From positions 77,427 through 141,426 of the forward strand of contig NW_019217832.1 in the NCBI RefSeq assembly GCF_002571385.2: a stretch of 64,000 bases of DNA, in the 5' to 3' direction. Shown here in pieces: positions 13,661-61,109 of this stretch. Within the stretch, counting starts at the first letter, position 1; each line of letters opens with the position of its first letter. The notes below the pieces were generated by a model. That model saw only the letters and a program-made list of their open reading frames with translations, did no database searches and had not been told where the DNA came from. This DNA comes from Stylophora pistillata. Lineage: Eukaryota. A program made the position numbers and the translations under genes.

Positions 13661-16600
13661 TCATCCAGGCTTTCCTGGTTTTCTAAATTTAGCTTGTACA
13701 AATATCCTTGGAACATCAACTCCTTCTTTTTTATTAACTGTCCTCCTGTGAGCATAATCACTGACTAATGTTTCAAATCCAGCCTGGTGGAAAAGCTTCT
13801 CAACCAAATCTGTGAAAGCAACACAAGGGAAAAAAAAAACATTGTGACAAGGAAATAAACTTTCTCAATAATTCTTACTATAAAAAGGTTACCAACCATA
13901 GAAGTTCTAGTAAGCCCCTTCCTCTAAAGAGACCTCTCTCTGAGGGTTCCCTTCTCTATCAATTCCTCCCTCACTTATACACCTGCCTCTTTATCAAGCC
14001 CCCTCTCTAATTACTCCGCTACTCTAGAAATTCAAGTTTCAAATAGGCCTTCCTTCTCTAAATGAGCATCTTCTTTATTGAGCTATGTTCTATATTATTG
14101 GAAAACTCAGTACCTAGCAAGGGAATTCCAGGTAAAATTGCATGTGAAAACTGATATTGTACCTCCCCTTCTCTATCAAGTCTCTCTGTCTAACACATCT
14201 CCCTCTCCAATAAGCCCCCTTTCCACAAAGTACCGCTCTCTATTAAATCCCCATTCTTTACAAAACCTCCCTCTCTAATAAGCCCCCTCTCTAATAAGTC
14301 CCCCTCTCTATTTTGCCTCTCTGTCTAAAACATCTCCCTTTCTAATAAGCCCCCCATCTAAGAAGTACCCCTCTCCATTATATCCCCTTCTCTATAAAAC
14401 CTCCCTTTTTGATAAGCCCCTATCTAATAAGTCTCCCTATCTAATAAGTCCCCCTCTCTATCAAGTCCCCTTCTCTATTTTGCATCTCTAAAACATCTCC
14501 CTCTCTGATAAGCCCCCTACCTAAGGAGCACCCCTCTCTATTAAATCCCCTTCTCTAGAACTCCTCCCCCTCTGATAAGCACCCTGTCTAAGACGTCCCC
14601 CTCTCTATCGAGTTCCCTTCTCTATTTTGTCTCTCTTTCTAGAACTCCTCCCCCTCTAATAAGCCCCCTGCCTAAGAAGTTCCCCTCTCAGTCAAGTTCC
14701 CTTCTCTATTTAGTCCCTCTTTCTAGAACATCTCCCCCTCTGATAAGCCCCCTGTCTAAGAAGTCACCCTCTCTATCAAGTTCCCTTCTCTATTTTGCCT
14801 CTCTTTCTAGAACATCTTCCCCTCTAATAAGCCCCCTGTCTAAGAAGTCCCCCTCTCTATCAAGTTCCCTTCTCTATTTTGCCTCTCTTTCTAGAACATC
14901 TTCCCCTCTAATAAGCCCCCTGTCTAAGAAGTCCCCCTCTCTATCAAGTTCCCTTCTCTATTTTGCCTCTCTTTCTAGACCATCTCCCCCTCTAATAAGC
15001 CCCCTATCTAAGAAGTCCCCCTCTTTATCAAGTTCCCCTCTCTATTTTGCCTCTCTTTCTAGAACATCTCCCCCTCTAATAAGCCCCCTGTCTAACTAAG
15101 TCCCCCTCTCTATCAAGTTCCCTTCTCTATTTTGCCTCTCTTTCTAGAACTCCTCCCCCTCTAATAAGCCCCCTGTCTAAGAAGTCCCCCTCTCTACGAA
15201 GTTGGCTTCTCTATTTTGCCTCTCTTTCTAGAAGATCTCCCTCTCTGATAAGCCCCTTGTCTAAGAAGTCCCCCTCTCTATCAAGTTCCTTTCTCTATTC
15301 AGTCTCTCTGTCCAAAACATCCACCTCTCTGACAAACCCCCTCTCCATTGAGCCCCCTCTCTAATAAGCCCCCTTCTCTAATAAGTCCCCCTCTCTAATA
15401 AGCCCCCTCTCCAATAAGCTCCCCTTGCTGCAATGCCCCCTTCTCCTTCAGTTATCGACAAGTTGTCATAGAGGAAACACAAGCGAAACAGAATTTTCTT
15501 TTAGAAATAAAAGTAAGAGGGACAACAAATAAAATTTGAATTTAGGAAAAGGACAAGGATGATAAGAGGACTTCAACTTACCTTTTGAAAAATAATAAGC
15601 TCTGGTGCCATCTTGTCTGACATAAAAGTTAACTGACAGCTTGTTAGCAGGACTAAATCTTAACATGGCGTGGTCGTATAACCCATAATCACGAAAGAAC
15701 AGCAATCCACCTGGCTTGAGAACCTTGTTTGGATGAAAAAAATATTAAATAATGGTAAAAATTAATGTTCTATTGTGTCGAAGTTTACTGTGTGTGTGTT
15801 GTCCTTACCAAGCTGCAACAGAAAAAACTTAAGAAGATCAAGCCAGGCCTTTTTCATTTTGTCCGTTTAGTTATTAAAGTTACTGTCACCTCAGAAACAA
15901 GTAGACAGTAAACATACAAGCCACCGGTGCTGCAGGAGAACACTCATATGACCCTGGTAAAACTAGTTTGATGTCATAAAACTAACTGTTTACTTTGTGG
16001 GTGACCTATGAGAAGAATGTTTGATAAATTAATGAGAGCAATCACTAAAGTTTACTTTTTTACCTGTATTATATTATGAAGAACAGTCAACATTTTATCT
16101 GGATGGACAGCAGACAGGACAAACACCAAAGTTGCAATGTCCACACTACATTTTAACACATGGGACTCCAAAGCATCCACTGTTAGGTCACAATGGAAGG
16201 CATTTACTTTTTCTTCACTAAATGTGGGATGTTCCTTGACAAAAGTCAAACAAAATTTCTTGACAACAGTACATGAGAAGGGATGATAAGGGGTTATCAA
16301 ATCCAGGGCTCAACACTAACTTTTCAACTTACTAGCCAAGTGGCTAGTGACATTTTATATGTTACCACAATTTCAGTTTGTTTACTAGCCAAACTGGCCG
16401 GTGGAAATAAAAAACCACTAACAAAGCTGAATTTCTACTGGTCTGTGGCTTGTAGGCTACTGTTAGTGTCACGCCCTGAAATCTGTCAATCAGTGTTATT
16501 TTTTGGTGCAATCCATCAAGGCAACGTTATTTGGGTTGAATCTGAATTACCAGACATTCCAAGCTATGATTGTACGGCACAAGTAAATATATGCTCATTG

Positions 16601-28400: not shown

Positions 28401-30699
28401 GTGCAAAAACAAGTTGTTACAGTTTACCTTGTACATGGTTTTGAATTCTATCAGAGGCTGAACTCTCAATAGCTTTGTATGGAAGATCCGCTGAGTAACC
28501 ATGCAGGTAAAGTTTTTCTGTTCTTATGTGTGTGTCATAGCTAAGGTCTTCGCACATATGAGAAGTCATGGTCACAGGTGCAGTGGCTGGGACCCGTTTG
28601 GCTCGCATCATTTGTTCTACTGACAAACGACGGCTAAAAGACACAACAAAACAAAAGCCACTTCAAAAAAATGATTAAGATTAAAATTTTATGTCTTCAC
28701 CAGCATGTTGATGTAGACCTGACTAAACCCTGAACATTTGATAGAAATCAGCATTACCCCTGTGACTTCTGATAGACTTCAGCTAGACTCTTCTTTCAAA
28801 TTGTCTTGTATTTGCACGTAAAACACAAGGAGAATTTGAAGTTGTATCAAGAGGCACTAAGGACTTCACTCTGGTACTCCTTCACATGAACTGATTCCAT
28901 CTCTAGAGAACTTACTTATTCTCTGCTGTTCCTTTATTCCTATATTTACAAGAACACTACACTAATTTTTGAGAGACATTACCATTTAGGAGTCACTTGC
29001 TTCACATCCTTTTCTTCCAGAGCTTCCTCATAACCTTCATTGACATCTCTCCTTTTCTTAACTGCCATTCTTCTCTCCAACCGATGCATGCGAGACTCCA
29101 GCTATAACACAGAACATTAACAACAAATGTAATAATCAAACCACAAAAATAAATGAATAACTAGCGAATGGTTTCAACCACAGGCTAATATTTGATTATA
29201 GTCGGATCATCAGGTGAGGGTAGTCTTGTGAATGACTGGTTGTCATTAGTAGCAACTGAAGTTTTGAAAACTCTGAGCAGAAGTCATCATCAGAGTTGAC
29301 TGTACTCTGATTACAACTTCCACCGAGGTTCTCAAATCATTAAGTTCCTAACCTCTGCCAAAAGTCATTTTCTACCCTAACTCATGATCAGCCTAAAAAA
29401 ATGAAAAACTCTTTGACCTGATAAAACATTAGCTGTCTCGTATGAGAATATAGCAGAGTGCATGTGTCATATTTTAAACTAATACTTGGTATAGAACACT
29501 TGGCACCTTATTTCTGTGTAATTTGGAAAGTATGCATTATAAACATGCCCTGCCATACAAACTAATGGGATTTGAGGAAAAACAGTCAAGAGTAAATCTT
29601 TTTATGATTGAAAGCAATTAACCTATATGGGGTTCTGTCCTCGTGTACTGGTTCACAAGAGCCGATACAAAAGACCAAACAATACACAGCAGCTAACCAA
29701 TTACTCCTAAACAAAGAAAGAACAATGGTAATTCCCTTGTGAACCAGTACACCAGGACAGAACCCTATATGGGTATTTTGTTTCTGGTATTATATCAACT
29801 AATAATCCCCTAGCTGACATTTTCCTTTCTTTCCTTGTCTGGTTGATATTATACTGATACTGAATAGTGAAATTCTGTCTACGTCACTCCTGAGAGTTAC
29901 AGAGTTGAAGGGACGCAAAATTAATGGAAAACTTGCATTGTTTGAAATTGAAATTTAAAAGATTCAGTGAGCAGGGAGTGATAATTCTACATATGTTCCC
30001 TAACTAGGACTGCTGAGAGGGCCATTCAGCCCAAAACAACATGAAAACGAAACGAATTGTTCACACAAAAAAATCAATTTAGAGATAATTAACATTTGCC
30101 ATGTGCCAACTTTCGAACGCAACGAATCAATTATTCCACGTGACCTGTTATGGGCGCCATGTTTGAATCTGCACGGAAGCCGCTGACCTCTCCAAAAATA
30201 AAATTTATGCAATTCTGTGTTTTTGCGAGCAAATAATTGAGACGATAAAACTAAAAATTATAAAAACATAACAACATAACTGAGCTTGTACCTGTTCCTT
30301 ATCCAATTTTAGTTGATTAATCTCTCGATCCTTCCTCTGCAATTCTTCTTGTTGCTGTTGAATAAGCTCCAAATGAAGTAACAAAAGCTGACGTAACTGA
30401 GTTACTTGACCAAAAGCGTCCGTTTTATGGTTGCTGCCGTCACAAGCCATTTCTGGCTCTGGAGGCTTATTTAAGGGCACATCAGTGCTGGGTTGAGGCT
30501 GTTCTTTCTGTGTATCACTACTACTGTTGCTATTTTTCACAGCCGTCGAAGATTTCGATCGCAAAACGCGGGTAAACTGGCGTTCCGCTCGTGAGCTGGC
30601 AGGACCGGCCGCCAACTTGTTTCCCAAAAAGGGCGCATCAGTTTTCGTTTGGTTTTGATCCATGTTTCCAGTGCAGGGTAAGTCCGTGGTCATAACCAT
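25498..30699 (-). CDS. MSL1: Male-specific lethal 1 homolog (MSL complex scaffold). Exons ~30699(or 30663)-30292, 29101-28983, 28633-28428, 27832-27735, 27027-26960, 26679-26525, 25848-25776, 25612-25498
   Basis: Coiled coil LRQLLLLHLELIQQQQEELQRKDREINQLKLDKEQLESRMHRLERRM (MSL2-binding/dimerisation region). PEHE domain VPTWQ...STDDDVFTKRHMKHELEERRRKRWDIQ...VPVVAFGFPVP...FEIPW. Junction phases are consistent; the start ATG is ambiguous. Confidence 0.92.
29200..29395. mobile_element. Third, highly degenerate copy of the Penelope/hammerhead-associated fold-back element
   Basis: caggtgagggtagtc...ctgagcagaagtcatcatcagagt matches blocks in 7294-7510 and 11251-11517. Confidence 0.5.
29621..29774. 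mobile_element. ~155-bp MITE-like hairpin with ~40-bp inverted arms in MSL1 intron 1
   Basis: acctatatggggttctgtcctcgtgtactggttcacaag against cttgtgaaccagtacaccaggacagaaccctatatgggt (3 mismatches). Confidence 0.75.
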
Positions 30700-30799
30700 T
30701 TGGCAGATTTTGGTCCACGTTCTCTCGAACACGGCTCTAAAACTGTTTCGTTTCATTCGGGTCAAGAGCAGCCATTACAGCCCTCTGGCAATCCATGTG

Positions 30800-31881
30800 A
30801 CAACAACATGGCGAATAAACACGAATGCGAGGCAGTCGATTCTCTCGAGAGTTACAGATGTCGTTTCCGGTATGACCTGCGGATATTGACGTCTGAAAAA
30901 TTTCTTCTTTTCCACCACTATTCAAGTATGAGCATGCAAAACTGTTGAGCAATAATACAACGTATGCTGCCCAAGCACATTTCGAATTCATTAGCTGACG
31001 AAAGCTATTTACGACAAAATGGCGCTATTTCCGGTAGGGAGGGCTGGGAACGGCTGGGAAAAGTGCCTTGCTTGCGTATTTCCGGTTAAAATTTTCACTT
31101 AAAAAACCCTCTTTGTTTAAATGATGGGGCAAACTTAAACCAAAGCAAGATCAGCTGGTATCTGAAATTTTCTTCGATTCCGATTTCTTTCCTTTTATTT
31201 TTTATCATTCTTATCAAAGAAACACCAAAACATGTTTCGTCATTTATTACTCATGTCATGTTTAGTTGTGAAACTTTTATCGTTTTTGATTCTAGAGGAA
31301 AATTTCACTTTTCCCTTATATTACATTCGAAGCAAGGAGAAACCTTATTTTTCATTCTGCTTTATTTGAATTCTGCGCGATTTCGGGGATAATGAAAATC
31401 TGCTCGCAGGCTGCTATGATTGACGCGCGAGACATGCGCGAAAACAGCCTTCACCTCATTGGCAGTAAAGACTTTTGGATGCGTGTGCGTCGTTTTATAT
31501 ATCCTCCGCGGCCCTCATCTTATGGGATAACAAGCGGTAAATTCCGAGAATTGTGAGATTCCGAGGCCCCTTCGAAAGATTCCGGGGCCCCTTCGAGAGA
31601 CTCCGAGACCCTTGTAAGCCCGGGATCAGCTTTGCCCGAGTTAACAACGTCCAAAGCTGCAAAAATAACTTGTCAGCGGCACCATATTTAACAACATGTT
31701 ATGACCTAGCGACACGCGCGTCCCATCAAGACTTGACGTACGTCTGCCCACTACCATTTTCCGTGTCCAGTTTTCCCGTTTGTTTCACAATCACTGTTAC
31801 ATTGGACTGTCGTTTTTGGAGTTAGAATTCTACTTTACACTTGCCAGTGCTGCATCGCTGGGTAAAAAGGGGAGAACTCAG
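30800..31881. promoter_or_regulatory. CpG-rich divergent promoter region between MSL1 (-) and the membrane-protein gene (+); probable non-coding first exon ending at donor 31881/31882
   Basis: Locally CpG-rich. YY1-like AAAATGGCG at ~31017; three 21-bp repeats at 31555-31615; CAG|GTAATT donor at 31881 and a polypyrimidine-CAG acceptor at 33515, upstream of ATG 33593. Confidence 0.45.
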
Positions 31882-32819
31882 GTAATTTTATATGTAACAT
31901 TTAAACAGAAACTCTTGGAAGACCCTTTGTTGATCAACATGATGCTTGTCGCAGGTCGATGCAGGTGTCATACAAAGAACGAGAAAAATGTCACGAAGGA
32001 AAAAAGAATGAGGATTAGAACATGTTATGAGGTACAGCACTTGCTATCTTGCTACAAATCGGCTGAAGATTTATTTCGAAAGAAGGAACTGAATCAAAGA
32101 TTTTCGTTTGGCACTGAAGCAAGGTTCGATCGATGCATGAATAGTCCTTGAGAATTTGATGTGGTAGACACTTCTGATTAGTCACGTAGTTATTCATACT
32201 TTGAAAGAAGTACGAAACAGAGCAACGTCTTAAGAGGTTTTAAGATCGTAGTCTGTGGTTAGATAGAAATAAGTGAGCTTTCAGTTAATTTGTCCCACAC
32301 CCCCAACAAAGATAATTTCACAGCAAGGCGCGGAAACCAAGTTCTTTTTCCCTTTAACTCCCAAGATCTGGTTGTTAATTCTCATCTCTAGCTGTTACAC
32401 ATTTCCTTGTAAGTATTTTAGGAGAATTTGGTGTTAGATGAAGATAACATTTTCCACCAGATAAGTTAAGAGTATTCTCATTACCTCTTTGCTGGATAAT
32501 GTATGGATATTTCAGAGAGAAGTTACACGTTAATTACTGCTTTGAGTTTAAGGGTTAATTCTTTGAGTTTGGTGTTTGATGTTACGCTTTTTCCAGTACT
32601 TCACACTACTAATGGTGCTTCTTGCCAGAAACACTCTAATTCTTACATTGTTATGTAATAAAGCAGAAAAATTAACACATTTACACCACTAACATTACAA
32701 AGCTTTTTTTGCTTCAAACATAATTATTAGCCAGCTTTGGTAAAACTTACAATATATCTTGAAAATAAGATTCTTTGTGACACTATAACTCTCCAATATT
32801 TTGATTTTTCAACACCCCT

Positions 32820-33272
32820 TAATAATAATAATAATTTGATATTTATATTGCACAAATTAAGATGTGGATATGATCAAATGCTCATCACAACACTTTTCGG
32901 GGGACTTTGGCTGGACTGCATCAGCAGTTTACAAACAATCGAAGGAAACTTATTTGAAGATGCCCCCCCCCCCCCGGCCCCCCAATTCCCAGTAAACAGG
33001 CCAGACCACATCACAGTAATCTCGTGAGTGAGTTCGTTAACGTCCCCTGCCTTAGAACCAAATTAACTAATTAATAGATGCAGGAGACAGGACCTACGGT
33101 TTATTCGTCCTTATCCGAGAAGACTAGAATGTCTATCCATTTCTTGATATTATAGAAAGGTAGTGCATTCTCCTTGGTTATTTTAAAACCTCGAGTGTTG
33201 GTCCGGCTGGGGCTTGAACCATCAACCTCAACCTCCCGCACAACAGTCCAGCGCTCTAACCAAATGAGCTAA
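32820..33272 (-). mobile_element. Near full-length tRNA-derived SINE with LINE-like 3' tail
   Basis: Minus strand: AGCTCATTTGGTTAGAGC...GGTTCAAGCCCC head, a body shared with 8795-9141, and a tail TTGTGATGAGCATTTGA...GTGCAATATAAAT followed by (TAT)n. Confidence 0.8.
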
Positions 33273-33592
33273 AATTTTTTGAAGTTATAGTTGAAGTTAA
33301 CATTGCCATATACAATAACTCGCCATGCAATAATTTCTGATTGTGCAGTGGTATTTTGGATATAAAAAAGGTGAACATAAACGAAAAGCTTAAAATTGGT
33401 CTTCATATTCTAAGAATCATTGTCAACCACAGCTAATAAACTTTCATCTAATCACAACTACAATTTCTAAGATTTCCTTTTGTACTGATGTGTGATCTTT
33501 CTTTTTTCATACCAGGGCCTCCATGATATTCAGTTACATTAAAAAATATTGACAACCATTTGAAAGCTGACAGTGGAATTTACTTCCTTGAG

Positions 33593-36500
33593 ATGTCGGA
33601 AATCGTGGACTGTATTGCTTTCATCGTTCAGAAAGTATGTTGGAGCCTCGGTGTTTGTGTGCTCTTTATTGCCAAACGTTTTGCAGATTTGTTTGGGTTA
33701 ATATTCAACATCCTTGCTTGTCTAACCATTGTGAGACTACCCTTTATGTTGATGCAGTTCTATCACATGGACTCAATGGCCGAATGGCGATATGTGGGCT
33801 TTGTCCACTTTTTGTTCTTTCTGGTAGACATACCATTTATTCTCATGTTCATGGTTATGGTCTTGTTTACTGGGGGATTAATTCTTATCCCACTTGTCCG
33901 TGAATTCAAGGCAGATGTTGAGTTTAAAGATCTCACAAGGAAAGAGTGGGGAATATATGGTCTGAAAGCATTTGAGCTCCATGCAATCATTGGAAAGAAT
34001 TTCTTTCGTCTCATCTGCGACATCTTGTGTGTTCCTTTGGCCATTATTTGTTTCTTCTCATGGAGATGTTGCATTTTTGTCAAAAAACTTCGAGAGAAGA
34101 ACTACAAGTGGAGAGACTTTGGATGGAGAAAAACTTGTATTAAACAATTTTTACAACTCTTGGTCGATATTCCTTGCATTTTGATGGGTATGCTGGTTAT
34201 GATGACATGGCGAGCCCCATTTTTAGTCAGAAATGTGAACGAGTGCCGGATAAGTGGTAAAATATGGAATCTATGGAGATTTAAGGTTTTTCCAGAATTT
34301 ATATTTATTTTTGTTGATTTTTTTTGCCTGTTGCTTTTTGTTTTAACCATAATAACATGGAGATTGCCTTTTTTGGTGCACAAGCTTTACCATGCAGAGA
34401 AAAAACAATGGGAGGTGCGAAAAATCATCGGTGAACAATTTCTGTTGATATTTGTTGATATTCCCTGCATTTTATGTGCCTTTACTGTGTTCATTACCTT
34501 ATGGAGAGTTCCCAACTTTATCAGAAACTGGGAAAGTGACCAATGGAAAACCAGGAAAAACTGTTTCTGTCAGATGGGATTGCTGCTTATCGACTTTGTC
34601 TGTATTCTGTTGTGTTTGGTTGTCATGGTAACCTTGTGGAGATTATACCCTTTAATTTGTGATGTCAAGAAGTATTATTTGAGGCCCCAGAGGGAACGAT
34701 CCTGGAAAATTCGAAAGTCCATTTGTAAGAATATTGCTTTCTTGCTGATAGATTTACCAGCCATATTTCTCTGTCTTATCATATTTGTTACAATTTTGCG
34801 GTTTCCTAAGTTACTGTCCAAGCTTATCCAGTCTGGTAATTTCTTCCTGGAGTTTGCAATGACAGTTTACTACGAGGCTGCCATGTTGGTTGTGGACATT
34901 TTCTTTGTCCTATTGTTTGTGGTTCTGTTCTGCCTCAGGCCCATCCAAAGCTGGGTCCATCTGCTGGAAGACGAGGAACATAAAAAAAATCGCATTCTGA
35001 AGCACTACATGCAGTGGGTACCTGATATCCTAGAGAAGCGCTTCCAGAATCGGAGAGAACTAGAAGGTATCTTTTCTACTTGTTTAAAGAATCGTTCACC
35101 TGAGGTAAAGCTCTGGAATAATCTTCGAACTGTCAATGGAGATTATTTGGAGGAATTGGAATGGATTCGAAACAAAGTGAGAAAATACGAACTCGATGAG
35201 GAATTCGGATATTTGATTGATATGGTCAAATGGTGGGAGAAAAAACGGATACACAAGCTGCTGCGCTTGTACAAATGTGAAATGAATTTTTTGCTCCGCC
35301 GCAATCTCTCCTCTCACAATAACAACCTGGCAAAATTTAGAAACGAGATGTTGCGATATGAGAGTCACGTGACCGAGCAGTATCGCGCCGTTGAAAAGTT
35401 CACCATTCCTAAAGTGCCGCTGTGGAGTGAGGAATGCGGGCTCAAGACGCGCACGCGCAGAGAGACTCAGCAAACTTTGATCGAATGTCTTCCCAGTGGA
35501 CAATTTTTCCTTTTGGTGCTTATACTGTTGAATTTAGCTCTGATTTACCGCGGGCCCGCCTTGTTGAGGAACCTCTGCCAGCGTTGGTATGACCGGAGGA
35601 ACGCAGTGTTGAATTCTTGTAAAGAATATTTTTGCGATCTCGTGACCATGTGTAGAATTGTGTTGGTCTTGATGTTCCTGTATCGAGCGCCTTTCCTGAT
35701 TACCGACATTACAAGAGACATTGTTTTCAAACACAGTTGGCGCGCTGTTCGTGAGACGGTCAAAAGATATCCAGCCATGATCTTAGAGGACCTCGTCCAG
35801 CTGATGCGTTTTTTTCTTAGCTGGGAGAGTGTGCGCTTCGTCTTCACTGCTTTTCTCTTTGGTCTCCTGATGCCTGCGGATTTAATTTTGACCATCATGA
35901 AGTTTTTGTTTTCGAAGGACTGCGCGTATTTCGTCACGGCTGTCTTGTATGTGATTTTCATGGCTTTTCCGTTCCTCATACCGTTTTACATCAGCCAGAG
36001 AATAGACTCTGACACATTGACAGTCGTAATCAGCGCATTCGCTGTGATTTTGTTGATGGTTTTGGTGATAATGGTTGTCCTTTTGCTCAAGCATAGAAAT
36101 CCATCCAACAGACAAATGCACGTTCAAGCAGACGCGCTTTTAATTGAACCAACGCCCTACGACTACGTACGATTTAACTGGACAAACATTCACGTGATCA
36201 TATTTGAAATCGTTGAGTTATTACAGCTGTTAGCGTTAGTGTTCGTGACAAGTGATCTACCGATGCCTGGCGCAGACACTCTTAGCACTGCTTCTCAATA
36301 TTTGCTTTTGAACTTCGCTTCTTTTAATGTGAAGCTGTGGCTGACTTTCTTTATATTCATAGTGTGGTTTTTCTGCTGCGGCGCGCCCGTAATCTTGGAG
36401 AGCGTTCTAGAGCATCTACCCAAGGGATCATGCGCAGGACACATGGGATGGACTTTGTTCTTGTCTCTTTTAGCCAACACCCTGTTTGTAACAATTGTGG

Positions 36501-39176
36501 AGAGTTTCCTTGCCTTTGTAGCCTGCAAGACCAACGATTGCCCTGAGCTTAATGCGACTGTAATCGCGAACATTTCGAGGGGAAATTACTGCGTACCCGT
36601 TGTTCTTATCGAAGAACCTAGCATGGAATGCTGGGAAGGAAGCCATAAGGCCATCGCCTTCCTAGGCCTCCTGGGATTGGTTTGGTACTCGTCCACTGCA
36701 ATCGTTTTTGGGACCAAATATGGCGATGTAGAACACCCGGGCCAGGATTTGAAATTTTCTCCCGCCTACAACATATTCATTAATTTCGTTAAAGCGTTAA
36801 TGGTGGGTGCGGTCGTTTTGGCTGCGGAACATCATATGATCGTGTTGTCCCTGCTACTCGTGGCGAATCTAGGTGCGATTATTTTCACTTTGACATTCAG
36901 GAGGATTTTCAAGTTTCAACTGTCAAATTCTTTGGTGTTGATCATCTGGCGCGCAGTAAGTTTTATTTGTGCTGCCCTCGCAGCTGTGGCAGCTCTTGTT
37001 TCTAAAATAAGAAACGACCCCGACTCTCTTCTACCTCTTGTTATTTTCCTCGGTGGCTGTCTTCTGGTGATACTCGTCGCTCTCATTGCATCAATTTACC
37101 TCAGAAATCGAAGGAGAACTCCCGTAGAAGAGCAGCGCAGAACATTCCGTCAAAAATTACTGTCGTTGGAAACAAAATTGGTTCAGGAAAACTATATGAT
37201 AAACTCTTGGACGAAAGGCCGCGCCCAATGGAAAAGACTGGTGAAGAACGTTTACGAAGCACAGAAAGCTGACCGCTCCGTCTCCCCGTCAGTTTATGCA
37301 CACCTCCAAGTACCAGCCCTTCCATTCCCTCCACCTCCCCTAGAGGAAGGACAGATAGCTGAAGCAGAACCAAGTATTTCAGCTTCCCTTCCCCCTCCCC
37401 CTACTTATGATGATCTGTTTCCCAACATCATGGGACCATACGGTGTTCCTCCCGTCCCTCCACCTCCATATACTGAAGGGATAACAGACGATGCGACTAT
37501 AGACGAGGGGAGAGATGATCCAACCCCCCTAGCACTACCCCCAGAGACTAAAGACGAGTCTGCATCTGGGAGCCAGTCTTCCTCGGACGACTCGGTCACT
37601 ATTACGTTCACAGATGCGGCACTAAACTTGGAAGCTGAACGAAAGCAATTCATTGGATCAGGCACGCATGCCCCACCCTATTACACGGATGAAGAAATGG
37701 TAAGAATGATTTGCTTTAAAAGAAGTCACATTCAATATCGAAAAAAATAGCCTCCATTCGCCGCAAAAATGAACCCGTAAATTTGTCCGCGAACATGATC
37801 TGTTCTGATGCACCCGACGTGAACTGTGAGCTTCGAGGAATTGAGAATAAACATATGTTTTGTGTAATGACAAATAGACAAGTATATTATCACTTCAAGC
37901 TGAAGATATTTTGTTTATTAACCATCATGTATTTCTTGAAACAAGCGGGGAAAAGGTGTTGTCGTTGAAAACGTTTTCTGAGTGGAATGAATGCCTAGCC
38001 TCGCAGTGTTTTCCGGTAAACTTTAATTATCAAAGATGTACTTCTCTTCTTTTTACAACAGCACAACGCTCGCCCATCTTGAATCGACTTTCAAAGAAGA
38101 TTGTGTTTTTTTTTTCCGTCGCAATTTACAGTATCATTTGGGTGAATTCACCTGATAATCTCTAGTTTCAGTGGTGGCATTTTCGATCACGTGACGCGTT
38201 AAGAGTGACCGTGCGGCATACGAAATATTTGTCGAATTTAAAGACAGTCGATTTTTGTGCTGTGCAAAATTAACAGTGAACTAGGTCAGGAAGAATAGAT
38301 TGAAAAACAGTTAAAAAATTCCCACTGATCCTAAGTTAAAACCAAAACATGTTTTTTCTCTAGGACACTCGATATGTGGAGCGGCAAGATTCTGAGGACT
38401 GGAAGCTATGGAATATCAACAGCATGGAGTGCAATGGCACAAATCTGCTGCTCGTGCTGGAAGAGTACATCCATTATTCTGCATTCTCCTTCTCCTTCAT
38501 TCTTCAGCTTCCTCTGTGGCGTTCTGCCGTCAAAAAATGTGACTGGCCTGGCTTGCTGCACTGCCTGACGGTCTTGGAGGGTAGCCTCACTGGAAAGTTT
38601 AACACTCCCACCGGAGTCGATATATCGCAGGCTCACTTGAATGTCCCCATATTTGAGCTTCACCCAGATATTGATACAGAAGAACCGCCATTTTACGAAC
38701 CTGAATCGCGAGATCCCGAAGTAATCCGAGCGCAGTCCGACCGTGAACGATCACGCGCACTCGCCGATGTGAAAAATGTCGGCGAATTCGGTGAACAGTG
38801 GGCCGAGCTTCTCGACAAACTTCTACCTACAAAACCGATTACGAAAAACTGGGTATGGCTTGAAGAGGTAGGTGGTTTCCATGTTTACCTGCGAAGGCCC
38901 ATTGAAGGGACCATAACGGAAGTGGGCCCTAATGGAGTAAAGATGGCTAGGGGAGCCTCGATTGCGCTGCCAAAACATATCCAAGGCACATTGTCAGATA
39001 CTAAAATTACATTTGATAAGGGATACGAGCCTAAAGGGAAAAAAGGGCCCGTTTCTGTTGCTGTTAGTGAGCTGGGACTCGTGAAAATTGATGAGAAACT
39101 GTACGTGACAGCTCAAGGAAAAAAACTGAGGTACGACAAAGCATTGGAAAGTATGAAGACTTTAACGTGGAAATAA
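33593..39176 (+). CDS. Uncharacterised ~1639-aa polytopic membrane protein with tandem hydrophobic repeats. Coding exons 33593-37699 and 38364-39176
   Basis: A 4.1-kb open frame ends at an ATG|GTAAGA donor. The tttttctctag|GAC acceptor at 38364 joins in phase 0 to the 266-aa ORF. About 20 hydrophobic segments; internal repeats; Pro-rich PPxY region. Confidence 0.88.
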
Positions 39177-42100
39177 ACTGTGCAATTTGCGATAGAATTT
39201 ATGCGTGACGTTTGCGTGACGAATGTTTGAAGCCTTACTTAGAAGTGTCATGTAAGTCACGCCTTATGATCCGAGTGTTTGTGACCCGTCTGCGACTGTC
39301 ACCGAAGCAACGAATTTCGCCTTCAAAGGGAGTTGAAATAATTTTTTCCTTTCAAGGGAGTAAATAATCCTTTATTACTTACAGCGGATGACTTCCTGGA
39401 GTAAGTATTAAAATCACGAGGCAAAAGGTCATCTCAATTCCCTTGGGGATTGAACTTTTGACCCTCACACCGAGATCTAATTATTAGTTCTCCTTACTGT
39501 TTACCATAAAATTCTTATAATTTTAGTTCAGAGAATGTAGTATTTGATCAATAAATAAAACCCCAAAGTAATGTGTTTCTTTATTCTCATCACTAGTATT
39601 CGAAAAATGTCTATAGCTCGCCTGTATGTGTCCTAACCAGCAGAAACATTTATGCTGGTAGGAGCGGTAGTCCAAATATGGTAGACTGTTCTTACTATTT
39701 CTTATTTTATCACTTACATTTTTTTTTTCTGAGAAAAATAATGTACAGTAATTTAGGATTTTTAAATAACGCATTTTTTTAGATTTTGAAGACTGGTTCG
39801 CCTAGATTAGCACTTGCTCTCTGTCTGTCGGTCAGCCTAGCTGTAACTTTTATTTTGAGAATAAAGAATAAAATAAAATGAAGATTGTTGTTATTGCGAA
39901 CTCGGCCAGCTTCCTTGAAGGTGTGTATGTGTTCGTTTATCACCGTACCTTCACCTTGGGTATCTCCGACTGTGAGCGCATACTCGGGAGGAATTCGCCC
40001 TTGGGCCTCACCTTGATCGAAAGCAAGGAGAGCACTGCCTCCCAAGTTGTAGAAAATTGTTTGAAAGATGTAGCTGATAATCTTCGTGCGAAACCCTTAC
40101 AACCTGAATATTTCATCTAAAGCAAAGCAAAAGAAATAAAAACGCGCGCTCGTGAGCGCCACGCAAGATGTTTTTTCAAAAAAGCGTGTGTTCTCGCCGT
40201 TTTGTTTCCGTGTCGACCACCAGTTGCTTTTTGAACAAAGCAGATAAAAAAAAAAAGAGATATTTAATGTTTCAGGTAATTCGCGGTTTTACTGGCAGGA
40301 ACGCAAATGTAAACATAACCATGGTCATACTTACATCGTAAGGATTAAATGTACAATTCAGTACATTAGATGAGAGGATTTTAAATACTGCCCTTAGAAA
40401 AATTCTGATCTTAGAATGACTCACTTATCTTTTCAACGAGATTATAAAGGACGGATCATTTCTGAAAAGAAACCCACATTTTTGTTTTTAAATTTGTAAG
40501 GCCACAACAATTCTCAGTACACCTTTTCCCAATGGAGACAATGCCTTTAGCTGCAAATTGACGCTAAATTTACAGTCTAAGTTTCTCCTGAATATCTGTT
40601 ACGCGTCAATCAAGAATGAATAAGTCATAAGTGGGTCTTGATATCTACACAATGAGTGTACGAAAACTTATTTCTTGATCCGAATTCAGCTGTAAAAAAG
40701 GTATGAGCGCGGTCGAAAAATTATTTCTTAAAAAAACTGGCGACGGGTAAAAGTCAAACGAAATTTTTTACTCAGTTTTCATTCATGGTTTTTTTTCTTT
40801 TTTTCTTCAAGACTCACCAGCGACCGATGTTACAGCTGATCCTCTAATAGCTCTCGTGGTGATGTATAAACAAAAACCGGGTCACGCCTCAGATCCCTTT
40901 GACATCGAGCAAAATCAAACAAGACCGAACAATACTCAAGTACAAGACAAAAGAATATATTATCTTTAACATAAATAGTCCAGCTGAAGTTTTTGACCGT
41001 TAACGACTCGCGATTGAAACAGTTTTAAATTTTATTTCAACCTTCACGGGCAAAATGCGTGCGGATCGGTTCTCTGGAGAACATATTTGCAGGCGTTTTA
41101 TAACCGCATTTTGAGCTATAATATTTGCGGTAAGGTCATTTCCTATTCGGAATCGACCTTTCCGGAGAGTGGGTGATTTAGTCAACACTCCAGTTCTACC
41201 AAAACACCTGATGCTAAAAACTTCCCGGAGACTAGACGCTCATTTTGTAAAGACGTCAAGCCAAGCTCGATTCGAGGATTTGAAATATGGGCAAGAAGCA
41301 CCTCGTAACATAGAGGTAAGGCTTTATTGTTTTTTCTCTCTCTTTTGTACTGAAAAAATTGTGTACCAAACAATGAATTACGTACCGAACGAAAGCTTGA
41401 CAACAATTGAACATTTCTTTCTTTTCAAAGTATATCATTCGAACTAATGCAAACAGTGTTTACGGTTAAAAAACCACGTTCATGATCAAGCCAAAATTTT
41501 CCATTTTAAATTTCCTTTTATCCCAACAAAATACAGAAAGTGTGTCACAGATAAATCAGTCTTAGTTCCCGAGATGTAGCAAATATTCTGAGGTGAAAAT
41601 ATAGGCTTAAATATATTGTACAGCACGGCGCAAAATGTTATTAACTTCGCTGTTCGGCCATTCATCCATTGAATTGTTAAAACGTGGGACGCGCTCGCCA
41701 TTTCCAATAGTCTCTTTGTTTCGAGTTTGAATTTTCTTCAAAAGAAACTTTCACCTCCCTCTCTTTTGTTTCTAGACCCCCATCATGAAATTTCTACGAA
41801 TTCTTGAAAATCCGCAAATAATTTTAAGAAAATAATCAATGCTAAAGAGGTTTGGAAATCTTACAAATTGACTAATGAACTTCCTTTATGTAAAAGCTTC
41901 GCGTGTGAAATTAAGTGGAGTGTCAAATTTCGTTTTTTTATTCAATAATTCTTCGGTTTCATTTTTATTTAGTTTTTATTCAGTTGACGTTACAGTTTGC
42001 TTATAGAGAACCAGCGGCTTCTATAAGTGATATTCGTTTTGACTGTCGATACTGATTTACATTTTGTTTGCCGTGTTTCGGCGCTAAATTGCAGGCTGAG

Positions 42101-59853: not shown

Positions 59854-60894
59854 CGCCTTTTTTGAGCGTCATCAAAGGAAACTCAAAGTTATCACAACAG
59901 CCAATGAGTTCAAAGAGAAACACCTTAAGAAAACCAATGAGAACCCGTAGAAAACGCATGTAACCGGCTCAAAGAGCGGGAAAACGCGCCTTACCAAGTG
60001 GCAGAGTCGTTTTAGTTTTACATCTGATTGGAGGTGACAAAAGGCTTATTTTGGACCAATAATAAAGCGCAGTAAGGCAGAGCTAGAAAACCTCTATAAT
60101 ACCTTGGCCAAATCGAGTATCTGAGGATAAAAAGTTTTGTTTTTGTATGTCTAGCATCGAAGCAAATGCGAGATTCGAACGGACAAAAACAAAGTTTTAT
60201 ATCCCTGGGTACTCAAAATGGCCGTTGAGTAAGAGGTCTCGATGCAGATTACTCGATGCAGTCCTAACTCACGCACATAAATTAGCTAAAGATTGCTCTT
60301 TGGTACACAAAACTTTGAATGTCATGATCAAAGAATGACTTTCCTGTTACTGGCCGAGAGATTAAACAATGAAGCACGAACAGAGATTGGGGCGGAAAAT
60401 TCAAAGAAAAGGTGAGGCGAAGGAATTGTGAGAGTCTTGATTAAGTTGTATTCACATCAAGAAAAAATCTTTTCTTTTATTCGACTCCTCTTACAGGGAT
60501 CAACTCACACGAACAGAAACCATATTGTTAATGAACAAATATTTTTTTTTTACAAGAGAGTTGAACTTCGCTCCCCTTCCTCTTCTGTGGGTTTTCCAAA
60601 TCAATCTGCCAGTACTTGATTGACAAACCCGTAAAAATCGATTATTGGTTACTAAGTTATGAATCAAGAAACACAACACTGTTCAAAGGAACAAAAGACC
60701 GCTGAACAAAACAAACGATACACAGTCTATGAGCCTCACTCTCGGAGTGCTGTGTGGCGCGCTAAGATCAATCTTTTTTTGGCTGTTTTTTTTTTTACTT
60801 GCACGACAGACTTCGCCGAAAAGGAGGATCAGCTCATAGTCTGGTAATTTGTTTACACCAACTAAGTTGAAACTGCCACCGTAAAGAGTTAAAA

Positions 60895-60929
60895 AGCTGA
60901 CGTTTCGAGCGTTAGCCCTTCGTCAGAGC
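60895..60929 (-). ncRNA. Minimal type I hammerhead ribozyme motif within a Penelope-like repeat fragment (~60870-61008)
   Basis: Minus strand GCT-CTGACGA-A-GGGC-TAAC-GCTC-GAAA-CG-TC-AGC: full catalytic core, 4-bp stem II, 3-bp stem I and vestigial stem III. Predicted cleavage lies between 60899 and 60898. Confidence 0.75.
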
Positions 60930-61109
60930 GAAACATTTGCTCAAGTTACCTTGTTACCCCCACCGACGCAGCACGACAGTTTCTTTGGAAACTTACCCAC
61001 TTTGTTCATAGTCTAGTAAACAACAGTCAAATCTAACTATGAAACACCTTTACAAATTAAAATCCCAAAATTACCAACTTGAACTAAAATTGCTTCAAAT
61101 TTGATTTTG

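What the first reader, a model, noticed from the sequence alone, without database searches (positions are those of the whole stretch)
33593..39176. Giant orphan membrane protein with a composite architecture (repeat array, TRP-like membrane domain, PPxY tail, beta domain)
Seen: a ~1639-aa protein encoded by just two coding exons (4107 + 813 nt), whereas the neighbouring genes are split into exons mostly under ~250 nt. Its layout is 9 hydrophobic repeats, a ~170-aa charged helical linker, 2-3 more repeats and TMs, a ~7-TM block, a Pro-rich tail and a beta-rich terminal domain. Inference: the 7-TM block has EIVELLQLLAL in its first helix, F-x-x-C after a later helix and VLIEEPSMECWEGSH before the next. 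This pattern recalls the TRP-like/Pkd2-Flc-type membrane domains common in protists and fungi. I do not recognise this combination as any named animal family, so it is the best candidate here for an undescribed channel, transporter or receptor system.
Basis: partly seen in the sequence, partly recalled or inferred. Interest (0 to 1): 0.85.

Follow-up and report, generated by a model that had tools for sequence, protein, structure and literature searches.

The report
Unnamed ancient giant membrane protein family
This is a real, expressed coral gene for a 1639-residue protein that crosses the membrane about 22 times; it has relatives in cnidarians, a comb jelly, a choanoflagellate and several protists, but the family has no name, no Pfam model and no known function, and it is not detectably a TRP channel.

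Summary
Exon 1 (33593-37699) and exon 2 (38364-39176) are open. RNA reads and contigs from four runs join them at a GT..AG intron. An upstream non-coding exon is spliced on at 33516, and the gene is single copy.

- nine Asp-centred hydrophobic units, with D-x-P in every second unit;
- a 150-residue four-helix bundle;
- two more units;
- an 11-helix core carrying a 4-Cys loop;
- three PPxY motifs;
- a 270-residue terminal domain.

"Orphan" is wrong. Full-length relatives occur in Anthozoa, Hydra, Mnemiopsis and the choanoflagellate Stephanoeca. The membrane core alone occurs in Paratrimastix, Diphylleia, Artemidia and Papus. The repeat array alone occurs in Amoebozoa and Anaeramoeba, three times fused to an F-box.

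"TRP-like" is not supported. PF06011 and every other Pfam model fail on 43 family members. PDB sequence and fold searches match only the generic helical bundle.

Best reading: an undescribed, very old eukaryotic membrane protein family. Its core is rich in conserved polar residues and looks like a transporter or channel. Its tail probably recruits Nedd4-type ubiquitin ligases. The function is inferred, not shown. The membrane domains were not fold-searched on their own, and the membrane topology is unresolved.

The parts
32000..32031 (+). 3' end of an upstream non-coding (5' UTR) exon. The donor is AG|GTACAG at 32031/32032. The start of this exon was not determined.
   Evidence: Five RNA reads in X23 carry a 30-nt loose end before 33514. 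That sequence maps uniquely to 32000-32029.
33516..33592 (+). 5' UTR part of the first coding exon. The acceptor is CCAG|GG at 33515/33516, and an in-frame TAA lies at 33539-33541.
33593..37699 (+). Coding exon 1: 1369 codons from the start ATG to the donor GTAAGA.
   Evidence: RNA coverage runs along its length. It is 87% identical to the nearest coral ortholog.
33647..34966 (+). N-terminal array of nine Asp-centred hydrophobic units (aa 19-458). Each unit is a long helix followed by a short helix. D-x-P occurs in units 2, 4, 6 and 8 only, and W/L-R closes each long helix.
   Evidence: The Asp residues are 75-100% conserved in 57 sequences, counting D143 among ungapped rows only.
34973..35422 (+). 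Charged four-helix bundle (aa 461-610).
35456..35728 (+). Units 10 and 11 of the same repeat type (aa 622-712), with invariant R653 and D682.
   Evidence: The HMM built on this region also matches the N-terminal array of relatives.
35729..36112 (+). Core block C1 (aa 713-840): one amphipathic helix followed by three hydrophobic helices.
36155..37117 (+). Core block C2 (aa 855-1175): eight hydrophobic helices. Conserved polar residues are N865, E875, Q878, E936, N1064, K1067 and R1120. A loop at 976-1017 carries 4 Cys and 2 N-x-S/T sites.
   Evidence: This is the block most widely conserved outside animals.
37118..37699 (+). Tail after the last membrane helix: a conserved helix (aa 1176-1235), then a Pro/acid-rich stretch with PPxY motifs at nt 37397-37408, 37460-37471 and 37673-37684.
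   Evidence: PPxY motifs are conserved in the tails of Oculina, Nematostella, Actinia and Hydra.
37700..38363 (+). Intron, 664 nt, GT..AG, phase 0.
38364..39176 (+). Coding exon 2: the 270-residue C-terminal domain plus the TAA stop. No Pfam match.
   Evidence: It forms the C-terminus of the Oculina (77%), Nematostella (55%) and Dendronephthya (48%) proteins. An HMM of it also matches Hydra, Mnemiopsis and Stephanoeca.
39177..39846 (+). 3' UTR, at least about 670 nt. The end is approximate.
   Evidence: The two bridging RNA contigs run 446 and 448 nt past 39400. An AATAAA lies just downstream, at about 39861.

Best explanation
The locus is a single-copy, transcribed, correctly spliced gene with two coding exons and at least one 5' UTR exon. 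It encodes a 1639-residue integral membrane protein with about 22 membrane helices. The protein belongs to an old eukaryotic family that has no name, no Pfam model and no relative of known structure that these searches could detect.

Shown:
- The protein is modular. Eleven copies of one Asp-containing membrane-helix unit are interrupted by a four-helix bundle. They are followed by a conserved 11-helix core, a tail with three PPxY motifs and a 270-residue terminal domain.
- The membrane core is shared with distant protists.
- The terminal domain is found only in the choanoflagellate-plus-animal clade.
- PPxY motifs stand in the tails of four named cnidarians and the choanoflagellate. They were not checked in Mnemiopsis.
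- The repeat array also occurs on its own in Amoebozoa, joined to an F-box.

Inferred:
- The alternating A/B units are antiparallel membrane-spanning helices. They build a long membrane-embedded array, possibly stapled by the conserved Asp of one unit and the Arg that ends the preceding helix.
- The C-terminal core keeps several polar and charged residues inside its helices (E875 and Q878 one turn apart, E936, N1064 and K1067, R1120) and has a disulfide-type outer loop. It is the working part and moves or senses an ion or small solute.
- The cytosolic PPxY motifs recruit WW-domain (Nedd4-type) ubiquitin ligases, which control the protein's abundance or sorting.
For: Gene reality:
- Open frames and canonical splice sites.
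- The junction is seen in four RNA runs, with strand-specific reads.
- A 5' UTR exon is present.
- There is one copy in the 398-Mb assembly.

Family:
- 51 word-seeded hits; 204 representative clusters at E<=1e-3, of which 43 reach E<=1e-30.
- Module HMMs give the distribution of each part.
- In the quick tree of the C2 block, the proteins that carry the terminal domain form one clade with 99% support.

No known family:
- Pfam gives no hit.
- PDB sequence profile.
- Foldseek has no match below E 0.06.

Structure:
- AF2 with 57 sequences gives pLDDT 82.2 and pTM 0.60, all-helical.

Conserved polar residues inside helices are listed.

PPxY motifs are present and conserved in cnidarians.

F-box domains score above the Pfam cut-offs directly after the array in Balamuthia, Pelomyxa and Soliformovum relatives.
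Against: - No functional evidence of any kind.
- The membrane domains could not be fold-searched on their own. A known transporter or channel fold is therefore not excluded.
- Every loop of the repeat array is rich in Lys/Arg. My helix count between the bundle and the Cys loop gives conflicting sides for the bundle, so the topology is unresolved.
- Conserved polar residues in membrane helices also occur in scaffolds and enzymes.
- PPxY motifs are absent from the Dendronephthya ortholog and from the protist relatives.
Confidence: 0.5

Rival explanations
1. It is a divergent member of the TRP-like (Pfam PF06011; fungal and protist Flc/Pkd2-type) membrane channel family.
For: - Language-model features of residues 620-1200 place a cluster in which 25% of members carry PF06011 at rank 3 (score 0.88, 174 of 256 shared features). 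The whole exon 1 puts the same cluster at rank 6 (0.85).
- It has many membrane helices, conserved acidic residues inside helices and a Cys-containing outer loop.
Against: - PF06011 gives no hit, even at E up to 10, on exon 1 or on 29 family members, and none at E up to 0.1 on 10 distant members.
- A six-frame scan of the genome with PF06011 at E<=1 does not touch this locus.
- There is no TRP_N-type lumenal domain. The N-terminus is the repeat array.
- The Atlas scores are below 0.9, which the tool rates as a lead only. The two better-ranked clusters carry no family.
Confidence: 0.08
2. It is mainly a membrane-embedded platform or adaptor for ubiquitin ligases, not a transporter. The Asp-containing helix array recognises or corrals membrane-protein clients. 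The PPxY tail brings in a Nedd4-type ligase, as Ndfip proteins do. In Amoebozoa the same array is wired to SCF ligases through an F-box.
For: - Three PPxY motifs are conserved in the tails of four cnidarian orthologs and, as one PPxY plus one LPxY, in the choanoflagellate.
- F-box domains score above the Pfam cut-offs immediately after the repeat array in three amoebozoan relatives. The same F-box domains are precomputed for two more relatives.
- The array is a separable module that occurs without the C-terminal core.
Against: - PPxY motifs more often mark a ligase substrate than an adaptor.
- The C-terminal core, not the array, is the part most conserved between animals and distant protists, and it keeps polar residues inside its helices.
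- The UBA annotation of the Arcella relative was not reproduced by Pfam.
- The F-box fusion says what the array can be attached to, not what the cnidarian protein does.
Confidence: 0.2
3. It is a force- or membrane-shape-sensing channel built like Piezo: a long blade of repeated membrane units feeding a C-terminal pore module. It is analogous to Piezo, not homologous.
For: The architecture is similar only in outline: eleven repeated membrane units, then a distinct conserved C-terminal membrane block, in a very large protein.
Against: - No Piezo Pfam domain is matched.
- The repeat is a one- or two-helix unit, not a four-helix unit.
- Oligomeric state and curvature were not tested.
- Foldseek found no Piezo chain among its matches.
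Confidence: 0.05
4. The model is an artefact: two unrelated ORFs joined by eye, a pseudogene, or a transposon-derived ORF.
For: An unusually long single exon in an intron-rich genome.
Against: - The junction is seen in RNA from four runs.
- The two parts are joined in the Oculina, Nematostella, Dendronephthya, Hydra, Mnemiopsis and Stephanoeca proteins.
- The gene is single copy.
- There are no stops, and it is 87% identical to another coral.
Confidence: 0.01

Closest known systems
Uncharacterised orthologs: Nematostella LOC5504324, Hydra LOC100200963, Dendronephthya LOC114541091, Actinia LOC116302959, Oculina ACROYT_G024206, Mnemiopsis ACHWQZ_G012073, Stephanoeca EP00041_P036326
   Same: The full architecture is shared: repeat array, four-helix bundle, units 10-11, C1, C2, tail helix and C-terminal domain. 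Identity to exon 1 is 73-76% for Oculina, 48-52% for the sea anemones, 43-46% for Dendronephthya, 35% for Hydra, 28-30% for the Mnemiopsis cluster representative P0048 and 25-29% for Stephanoeca.
   Different: None has a name, a described function or a paper in the searched library. Lengths vary from 1613 to 1784 aa, mostly in the tail.
Amoebozoan repeat-array proteins with an F-box (Balamuthia QOT17_022324, Pelomyxa Pelo_5677, Soliformovum EP01119_P009854)
   Same: They share the Asp-centred membrane-helix unit, repeated many times (6-10 HMM stretches per protein).
   Different: They lack C1, C2, the four-helix bundle and the terminal domain. They carry an F-box right after the array. They are also uncharacterised.
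TRP-like family PF06011 (yeast Flc1-3, fission-yeast Pkd2)
   Same: Both are multi-pass eukaryotic membrane proteins common in protists and fungi. There is a weak language-model feature similarity (0.85-0.88).
   Different: No HMM match in any member tested. There is no N-terminal lumenal domain. The protein is far larger and has the repeat array.
Piezo channels
   Same: In outline only: a giant protein, serial membrane repeats and a distinct C-terminal membrane module.
   Different: No sequence or fold match. The repeat unit is different. From my own knowledge, Piezo repeats are four-helix units and the pore forms in a trimer. Nothing of that kind was tested here.
Ndfip1/2 and other PPxY-bearing membrane proteins (ENaC subunits and others)
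   Same: PPxY motifs lie in a tail next to membrane helices. From established knowledge, such motifs bind the WW domains of Nedd4-family ligases.
   Different: No sequence relation. Ndfip proteins have three membrane helices. Binding was not tested.
Four-helix bundles such as Rex1BD (8j0h) and the cytosolic bundle of ribophorin I (8b6l_O, 6s7o_E)

Membership tests
TRP-like, Pfam PF06011 (Flc/Pkd2 type) | Match to the PF06011 profile at or above its curated cut-off (28.5 bits) | tested here: not met
   No PF06011 hit at E up to 1, up to 10 on 29 members, or up to 0.1 on 10 distant members. The genome scan at E<=1 finds only sub-threshold matches on other contigs.
TRP-like, Pfam PF06011 (Flc/Pkd2 type) | N-terminal signal peptide and lumenal TRP_N/ML-like domain before the membrane block (from my knowledge of the family) | tested here: not met
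   The protein starts directly with hydrophobic helices of the repeat array. No Pfam domain is found at the N-terminus.
TRP-like, Pfam PF06011 (Flc/Pkd2 type) | Shared fold of the membrane block | not testable with these tools
   No solved or held model of an Flc/Pkd2-type protein was available.
Animal TRP / PKD2 cation channels (six-helix ion-transport domain) | Match to the Ion_trans or PKD_channel Pfam profiles | tested here: not met
   No such hit. No TRP or PKD chain is among the listed Foldseek matches.
Piezo | Match to Piezo Pfam profiles or to solved Piezo structures | tested here: not met
   The whole-model fold search is weak for single domains, so fold-level analogy stays open.
Nedd4-ligase clients or adaptors with PPxY | PPxY motifs in a cytosol-facing segment | tested here: inconclusive
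   Three PPxY motifs are present and conserved in four cnidarians. The cytosolic side is inferred from the RNRRR stretch after the last helix and was not tested. The motifs are absent in Dendronephthya.
Nedd4-ligase clients or adaptors with PPxY | Physical binding of WW domains | not tested
   No complex prediction or experiment was run.
The unnamed family itself (cnidarian/ctenophore/choanoflagellate LOC proteins) | Asp-centred alternating units, four-helix bundle, C1-C2 core and C-terminal domain, in this order | tested here: met
   Module HMMs built from A1 match all parts in the same order in Oculina, Nematostella, Actinia, Dendronephthya, Hydra, Mnemiopsis and Stephanoeca. Exon 2 aligns to their C-termini.

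The most novel reading that the evidence does not exclude
The Asp-centred helix array is a previously unrecognised kind of membrane module: a solenoid of antiparallel membrane helices that works as a client-binding platform inside the bilayer. It has been wired independently to two ubiquitin systems, PPxY/Nedd4 in choanoflagellates and early-branching animals and F-box/SCF in Amoebozoa. On this reading the cnidarian protein is a new type of membrane machine that couples a transport-like core to ubiquitin-dependent sorting. It dates to early eukaryotes and has no named bilaterian member.
Probability: 0.15. Interest if true: 0.8.

Novelty: categorically new. Interest (0 to 1): 0.62.

Why it matters
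A 1600-residue protein with about 22 membrane helices has been conserved from choanoflagellates through ctenophores and cnidarians, and its core reaches back to Discoba, Metamonada and CRuMs. It is one of the larger pieces of the eukaryotic membrane proteome without a family name, a structure or a function.

No bilaterian, fungal or plant protein appears among the named hits. That would explain why the family was never studied in model organisms.

Nematostella and Hydra both carry it and both allow gene knock-out, so the function is directly testable. The repeat array, with one buried Asp per helix and strict two-unit alternation, is an unusual design. It could extend the known types of membrane protein architecture.

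If domain-wise structure comparison later places the core in a known transporter superfamily, the finding shrinks to a distant new branch with an odd N-terminal extension.

Tried and rejected
- Pfam on both exons, on 29 aligned members and on 10 short or distant members. Only sub-threshold noise came back (CcmD, EphA2_TM and similar single-helix models).
- PF06011 scan of the whole assembly. This locus was not hit. The five weak matches lie on other contigs and are below the cut-off.
- PDB sequence search with the family profile. The only hit was the designed protein TMH4C4 (6m6z, E 2e-4). I take this as shared membrane-helix composition, not kinship.
- Structure of exon 2 from a single sequence. 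pLDDT was 35.5 and the model is unusable. This used one of the two structure jobs; an alignment should have been supplied.
- Foldseek against PDB with the 1200-residue model. The best E was 0.06, and the rows were alpha-solenoids with TM-scores below 0.1. Rejected.
- VIA wide and VIA second look. Every informative row covers only residues 450-610. The membrane parts were not really tested.
- Exon 2 searched alone for stand-alone relatives. Only anthozoan exon-sized fragments of the same gene were found.
- Two ESM Atlas searches. All scores were below 0.9.
- Literature search for seven locus names. No papers.
I could therefore neither fetch DNA of relatives and cut sub-ranges for a profile search, nor learn the source of the unnamed ENA and Logan hits.
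- A 93-sequence alignment failed internally and was replaced by A2 with 57 sequences.
- UBA domain in the Arcella relative: named by UniRef but not reproduced by Pfam, so it is not used as evidence.
- The spliced 1639-residue protein was never assembled or searched as one sequence. Each exon was searched by reference.
- Topology from Lys/Arg counts and helix parity gave contradictory sides for the four-helix bundle. It is left unresolved.

Full report
**1. What is in the sequence**

The plus strand has an open frame from 33560 to 37750. Its first ATG is at 33593, preceded by an in-frame TAA at 33539-33541. A GTAAGA donor follows codon 1369 at 37699/37700. A polypyrimidine tract and AG precede 38364, where a second open frame of 270 codons runs to the TAA at 39174-39176. 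The intron is 664 nt and phase 0. No other ORF in the 64-kb window exceeds 413 codons. The gene occurs once in the 398-Mb assembly.

**2. Transcript evidence**

Twenty indexed public runs from nine studies hold the stretch 36900-39300. Seven of them are on record as polyA RNA-seq. Several hold 0.71-0.73 of its words, which is the share expected once the intron is removed.

I laid two stranded raw-read RNA runs and two polyA contig sets on 33420-39400.
- There is a single joint, 37698 to 38363, 'skips 664, GT..AG (cut +1)'. This is the predicted 37699|38364 junction.
- The joint is seen in 7 and 7 reads, and in one contig per run (2809 and 2453 nt) that bridges it with 255 nt on the shorter side.
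- Almost all pairs have the first mate on the minus strand, so in a standard stranded library the RNA is from the plus strand.
- Coverage runs through exon 1 and is higher toward the 3' end.
- Five reads carry a loose end before 33514 that maps uniquely to 32000-32029. With the local sequence this gives a non-coding exon ending at 32031 (AG|GTACAG), spliced to 33516 (CCAG|GG).

The gene therefore has two coding exons and at least one 5' UTR exon. The 3' UTR is at least about 670 nt long.

**3. Layout of the protein**

Hydropathy and an AlphaFold2 model of residues 1-1200 built on 57 family sequences (mean pLDDT 82.2, pTM 0.60) agree on an all-helical protein.
- Residues 19-458 hold nine units. 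Each is a long helix of 24-35 residues plus a short helix of about 10.
- Each long helix carries an Asp about a third of the way into its hydrophobic stretch (D32, 79, 143, 192, 242, 289, 334, 387, 435). Each helix ends in W/L-R followed by Pro within two or three residues.
- Units 2, 4, 6 and 8 read D-x-P and the others do not. The pattern is kept in the family consensus.
- Residues 461-610 form a four-helix bundle.
- Residues 622-705 hold two more units, with invariant R653 and D682.
- The core follows: one amphipathic helix plus three hydrophobic helices (716-833), then eight hydrophobic helices (863-1173).
- Between the third and fourth of these eight lies a loop (976-1017) with four Cys and two N-x-S/T sites. 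It probably faces outward.
- After the last helix come RNRRR, a conserved helix (1176-1235) and a Pro/acid-rich stretch with PPTY, PPPY and PPYY starting at residues 1269, 1290 and 1361.
- Exon 2 encodes the terminal 270 residues.

'Beta-rich' for exon 2 could not be checked, because the single-sequence model was useless (pLDDT 35.5).

**4. Relatives**

The protein is not an orphan.
- A word-seeded search with exon 1 gave 51 hits.
- A full HMMER scan of 1.84 billion representatives gave 204 clusters at E<=1e-3 and 43 at E<=1e-30.
- A profile search added Hydra.

Names, with taxonomy checked for two species:
- Anthozoa: Oculina, Desmophyllum, Nematostella, Actinia, Actinostola, Dendronephthya.
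- Hydrozoa: Hydra vulgaris.
- Ctenophora: Mnemiopsis leidyi.
- Choanoflagellata: Stephanoeca diplocostata.
- Metamonada: Paratrimastix, Anaeramoeba.
- CRuMs: Diphylleia.
- Euglenozoa: the diplonemid Artemidia and the prokinetoplastid Papus.
- Amoebozoa: Dictyostelium, Heterostelium, Balamuthia, Pelomyxa, Mastigella, Mastigamoeba, Soliformovum, Clastostelium, Arcella.

All are annotated as hypothetical or carry obviously transferred names. No bilaterian, fungal or plant protein is among the named hits.

**5. Module distribution**

I built HMMs for seven modules from alignment A1 and ran them on all fetched proteins.
- The complete order (array, bundle, units 10-11, C1, C2, tail helix, terminal domain) occurs in all named cnidarians, Mnemiopsis and Stephanoeca.
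- Paratrimastix, Diphylleia and Artemidia have the array plus C1 and C2, but no terminal domain.
- Papus also has the bundle and the tail helix.
- The Amoebozoa and Anaeramoeba proteins match the array only, with up to 13 HMM stretches per protein.
- In Balamuthia, Pelomyxa and Soliformovum an F-box above the Pfam cut-offs follows within 17-34 residues of the last array match.

A quick maximum-likelihood tree of the C2 block (the careful search did not finish) puts the proteins that carry the terminal domain in one clade with 99% SH-aLRT support. Inside it sit a choanoflagellate group, a group around Mnemiopsis that contains most unnamed hits of 28-34% identity, and a cnidarian group that splits into Hydra-like, octocoral and hexacoral parts. 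Exon 2 aligns to the C-termini of the Oculina (77%), Nematostella (55%) and Dendronephthya (48%) proteins. This supports the exon join independently of the RNA.

**6. Tests against known families**

- Pfam gives nothing for either exon, for 29 members at E up to 10 or for 10 short or distant members.
- The family profile finds one PDB sequence, the designed membrane protein TMH4C4 (E 2e-4). I read that as shared composition.
- Foldseek of the 1200-residue model against PDB gives no match below E 0.06.
- The only support for 'TRP-like' is a language-model feature similarity of 0.85-0.88 to one cluster in which a quarter of the members carry PF06011. That is below the 0.9 that the tool treats as more than a lead.

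I therefore reject membership in PF06011 on the features tested. I keep 'some kind of channel or transporter' only as a functional guess. The membrane blocks were not fold-searched on their own, so a known fold is not excluded.

**7. How it may work**

Shown:
- Each unit's Asp is kept in 75-100% of the 57 sequences (D143 among ungapped rows only). R207, R305, R350 and R653 are nearly invariant.
- In the core, N865, E875, Q878, P932, E936, W953, C978, C1013, Y1032, D1052, N1064, K1067 and R1120 are kept in at least 77%, across animals and protists.

Inferred:
- The strict two-unit alternation fits helices that cross the membrane in alternating directions. The Asp near the start of one helix would then lie level with the Arg that ends the previous helix, which suggests a row of buried salt bridges holding a long helix array together.
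- The core has polar residues spaced one turn apart inside helices and a disulfide-type outer loop. It is the part that looks like a solute or ion path.
- The PPxY motifs are conserved in Oculina, Nematostella, Actinia and Hydra, and in some unnamed relatives. By established knowledge they are ligands of the WW domains of Nedd4-family ligases, which points to control by ubiquitin-dependent sorting.
- The F-box fusions in Amoebozoa show that the array alone can serve as the membrane part of a ubiquitin-ligase receptor. This keeps a scaffold or adaptor reading alive.

Unresolved:
- All loops of the array are rich in Lys/Arg.
- Counting helices from the outward Cys loop back to the bundle puts the bundle on the outer side, whereas charge counts put it inside.

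**8. Verdict**

At the family level I rate it categorically new. The caveats are that the function is unknown and that the domain-wise structure comparison remains to be done.

The joined two-exon protein was never built or searched as one sequence. All searches were run exon by exon, by reference.

Noticed in passing
window 32032-33515: A 1484-nt intron in the 5' UTR separates a non-coding exon ending at 32031 from the first coding exon. The region 30001-32000 has raised G+C (0.425 against about 0.37 around it) and may hold the promoter.
   Followed up: partly
window 37797-38274: Low-depth RNA contigs (depth about 3, against 43 for the exons) lie inside the intron in two polyA runs. This is probably unspliced precursor or DNA carry-over.
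   Followed up: no
window 38489: One RNA contig (run X12) lacks 3 nt here, an in-frame length difference in exon 2. Several single-base differences between runs are also listed. These are probably alleles or strains.
   Followed up: no
window 33808: In run X24, 5 of 13 reads (2 start places) carry an extra T behind 33808 in exon 1, which would shift the frame. It is probably duplicates of a read error, because the other runs do not show it.
   Followed up: no
window 14001-16000 and 60001-62000: Strong strand asymmetry in composition: GC skew is -0.45 at 14-16 kb and +0.25 (with AT skew +0.21) at 60-62 kb. The second region is where another first-stage note places a hammerhead-like motif in a probable ANKLE2 3' UTR.
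   Followed up: no
L002 and L003 (G000 contig C212, 161224-161574 and 98140-98490): Two nearby sub-threshold matches to the same part of the TRP-like profile PF06011 (positions 281-394; E 0.02 and 0.13). This may be a tandem pair of distant TRP-like genes elsewhere in this genome.
   Followed up: no
P0085, P0108, P0101 (Balamuthia, Pelomyxa, Soliformovum proteins): About 550-700 residues follow the F-box in these amoebozoan relatives and have no Pfam match. This could be an unrecognised substrate-binding domain.
   Followed up: no
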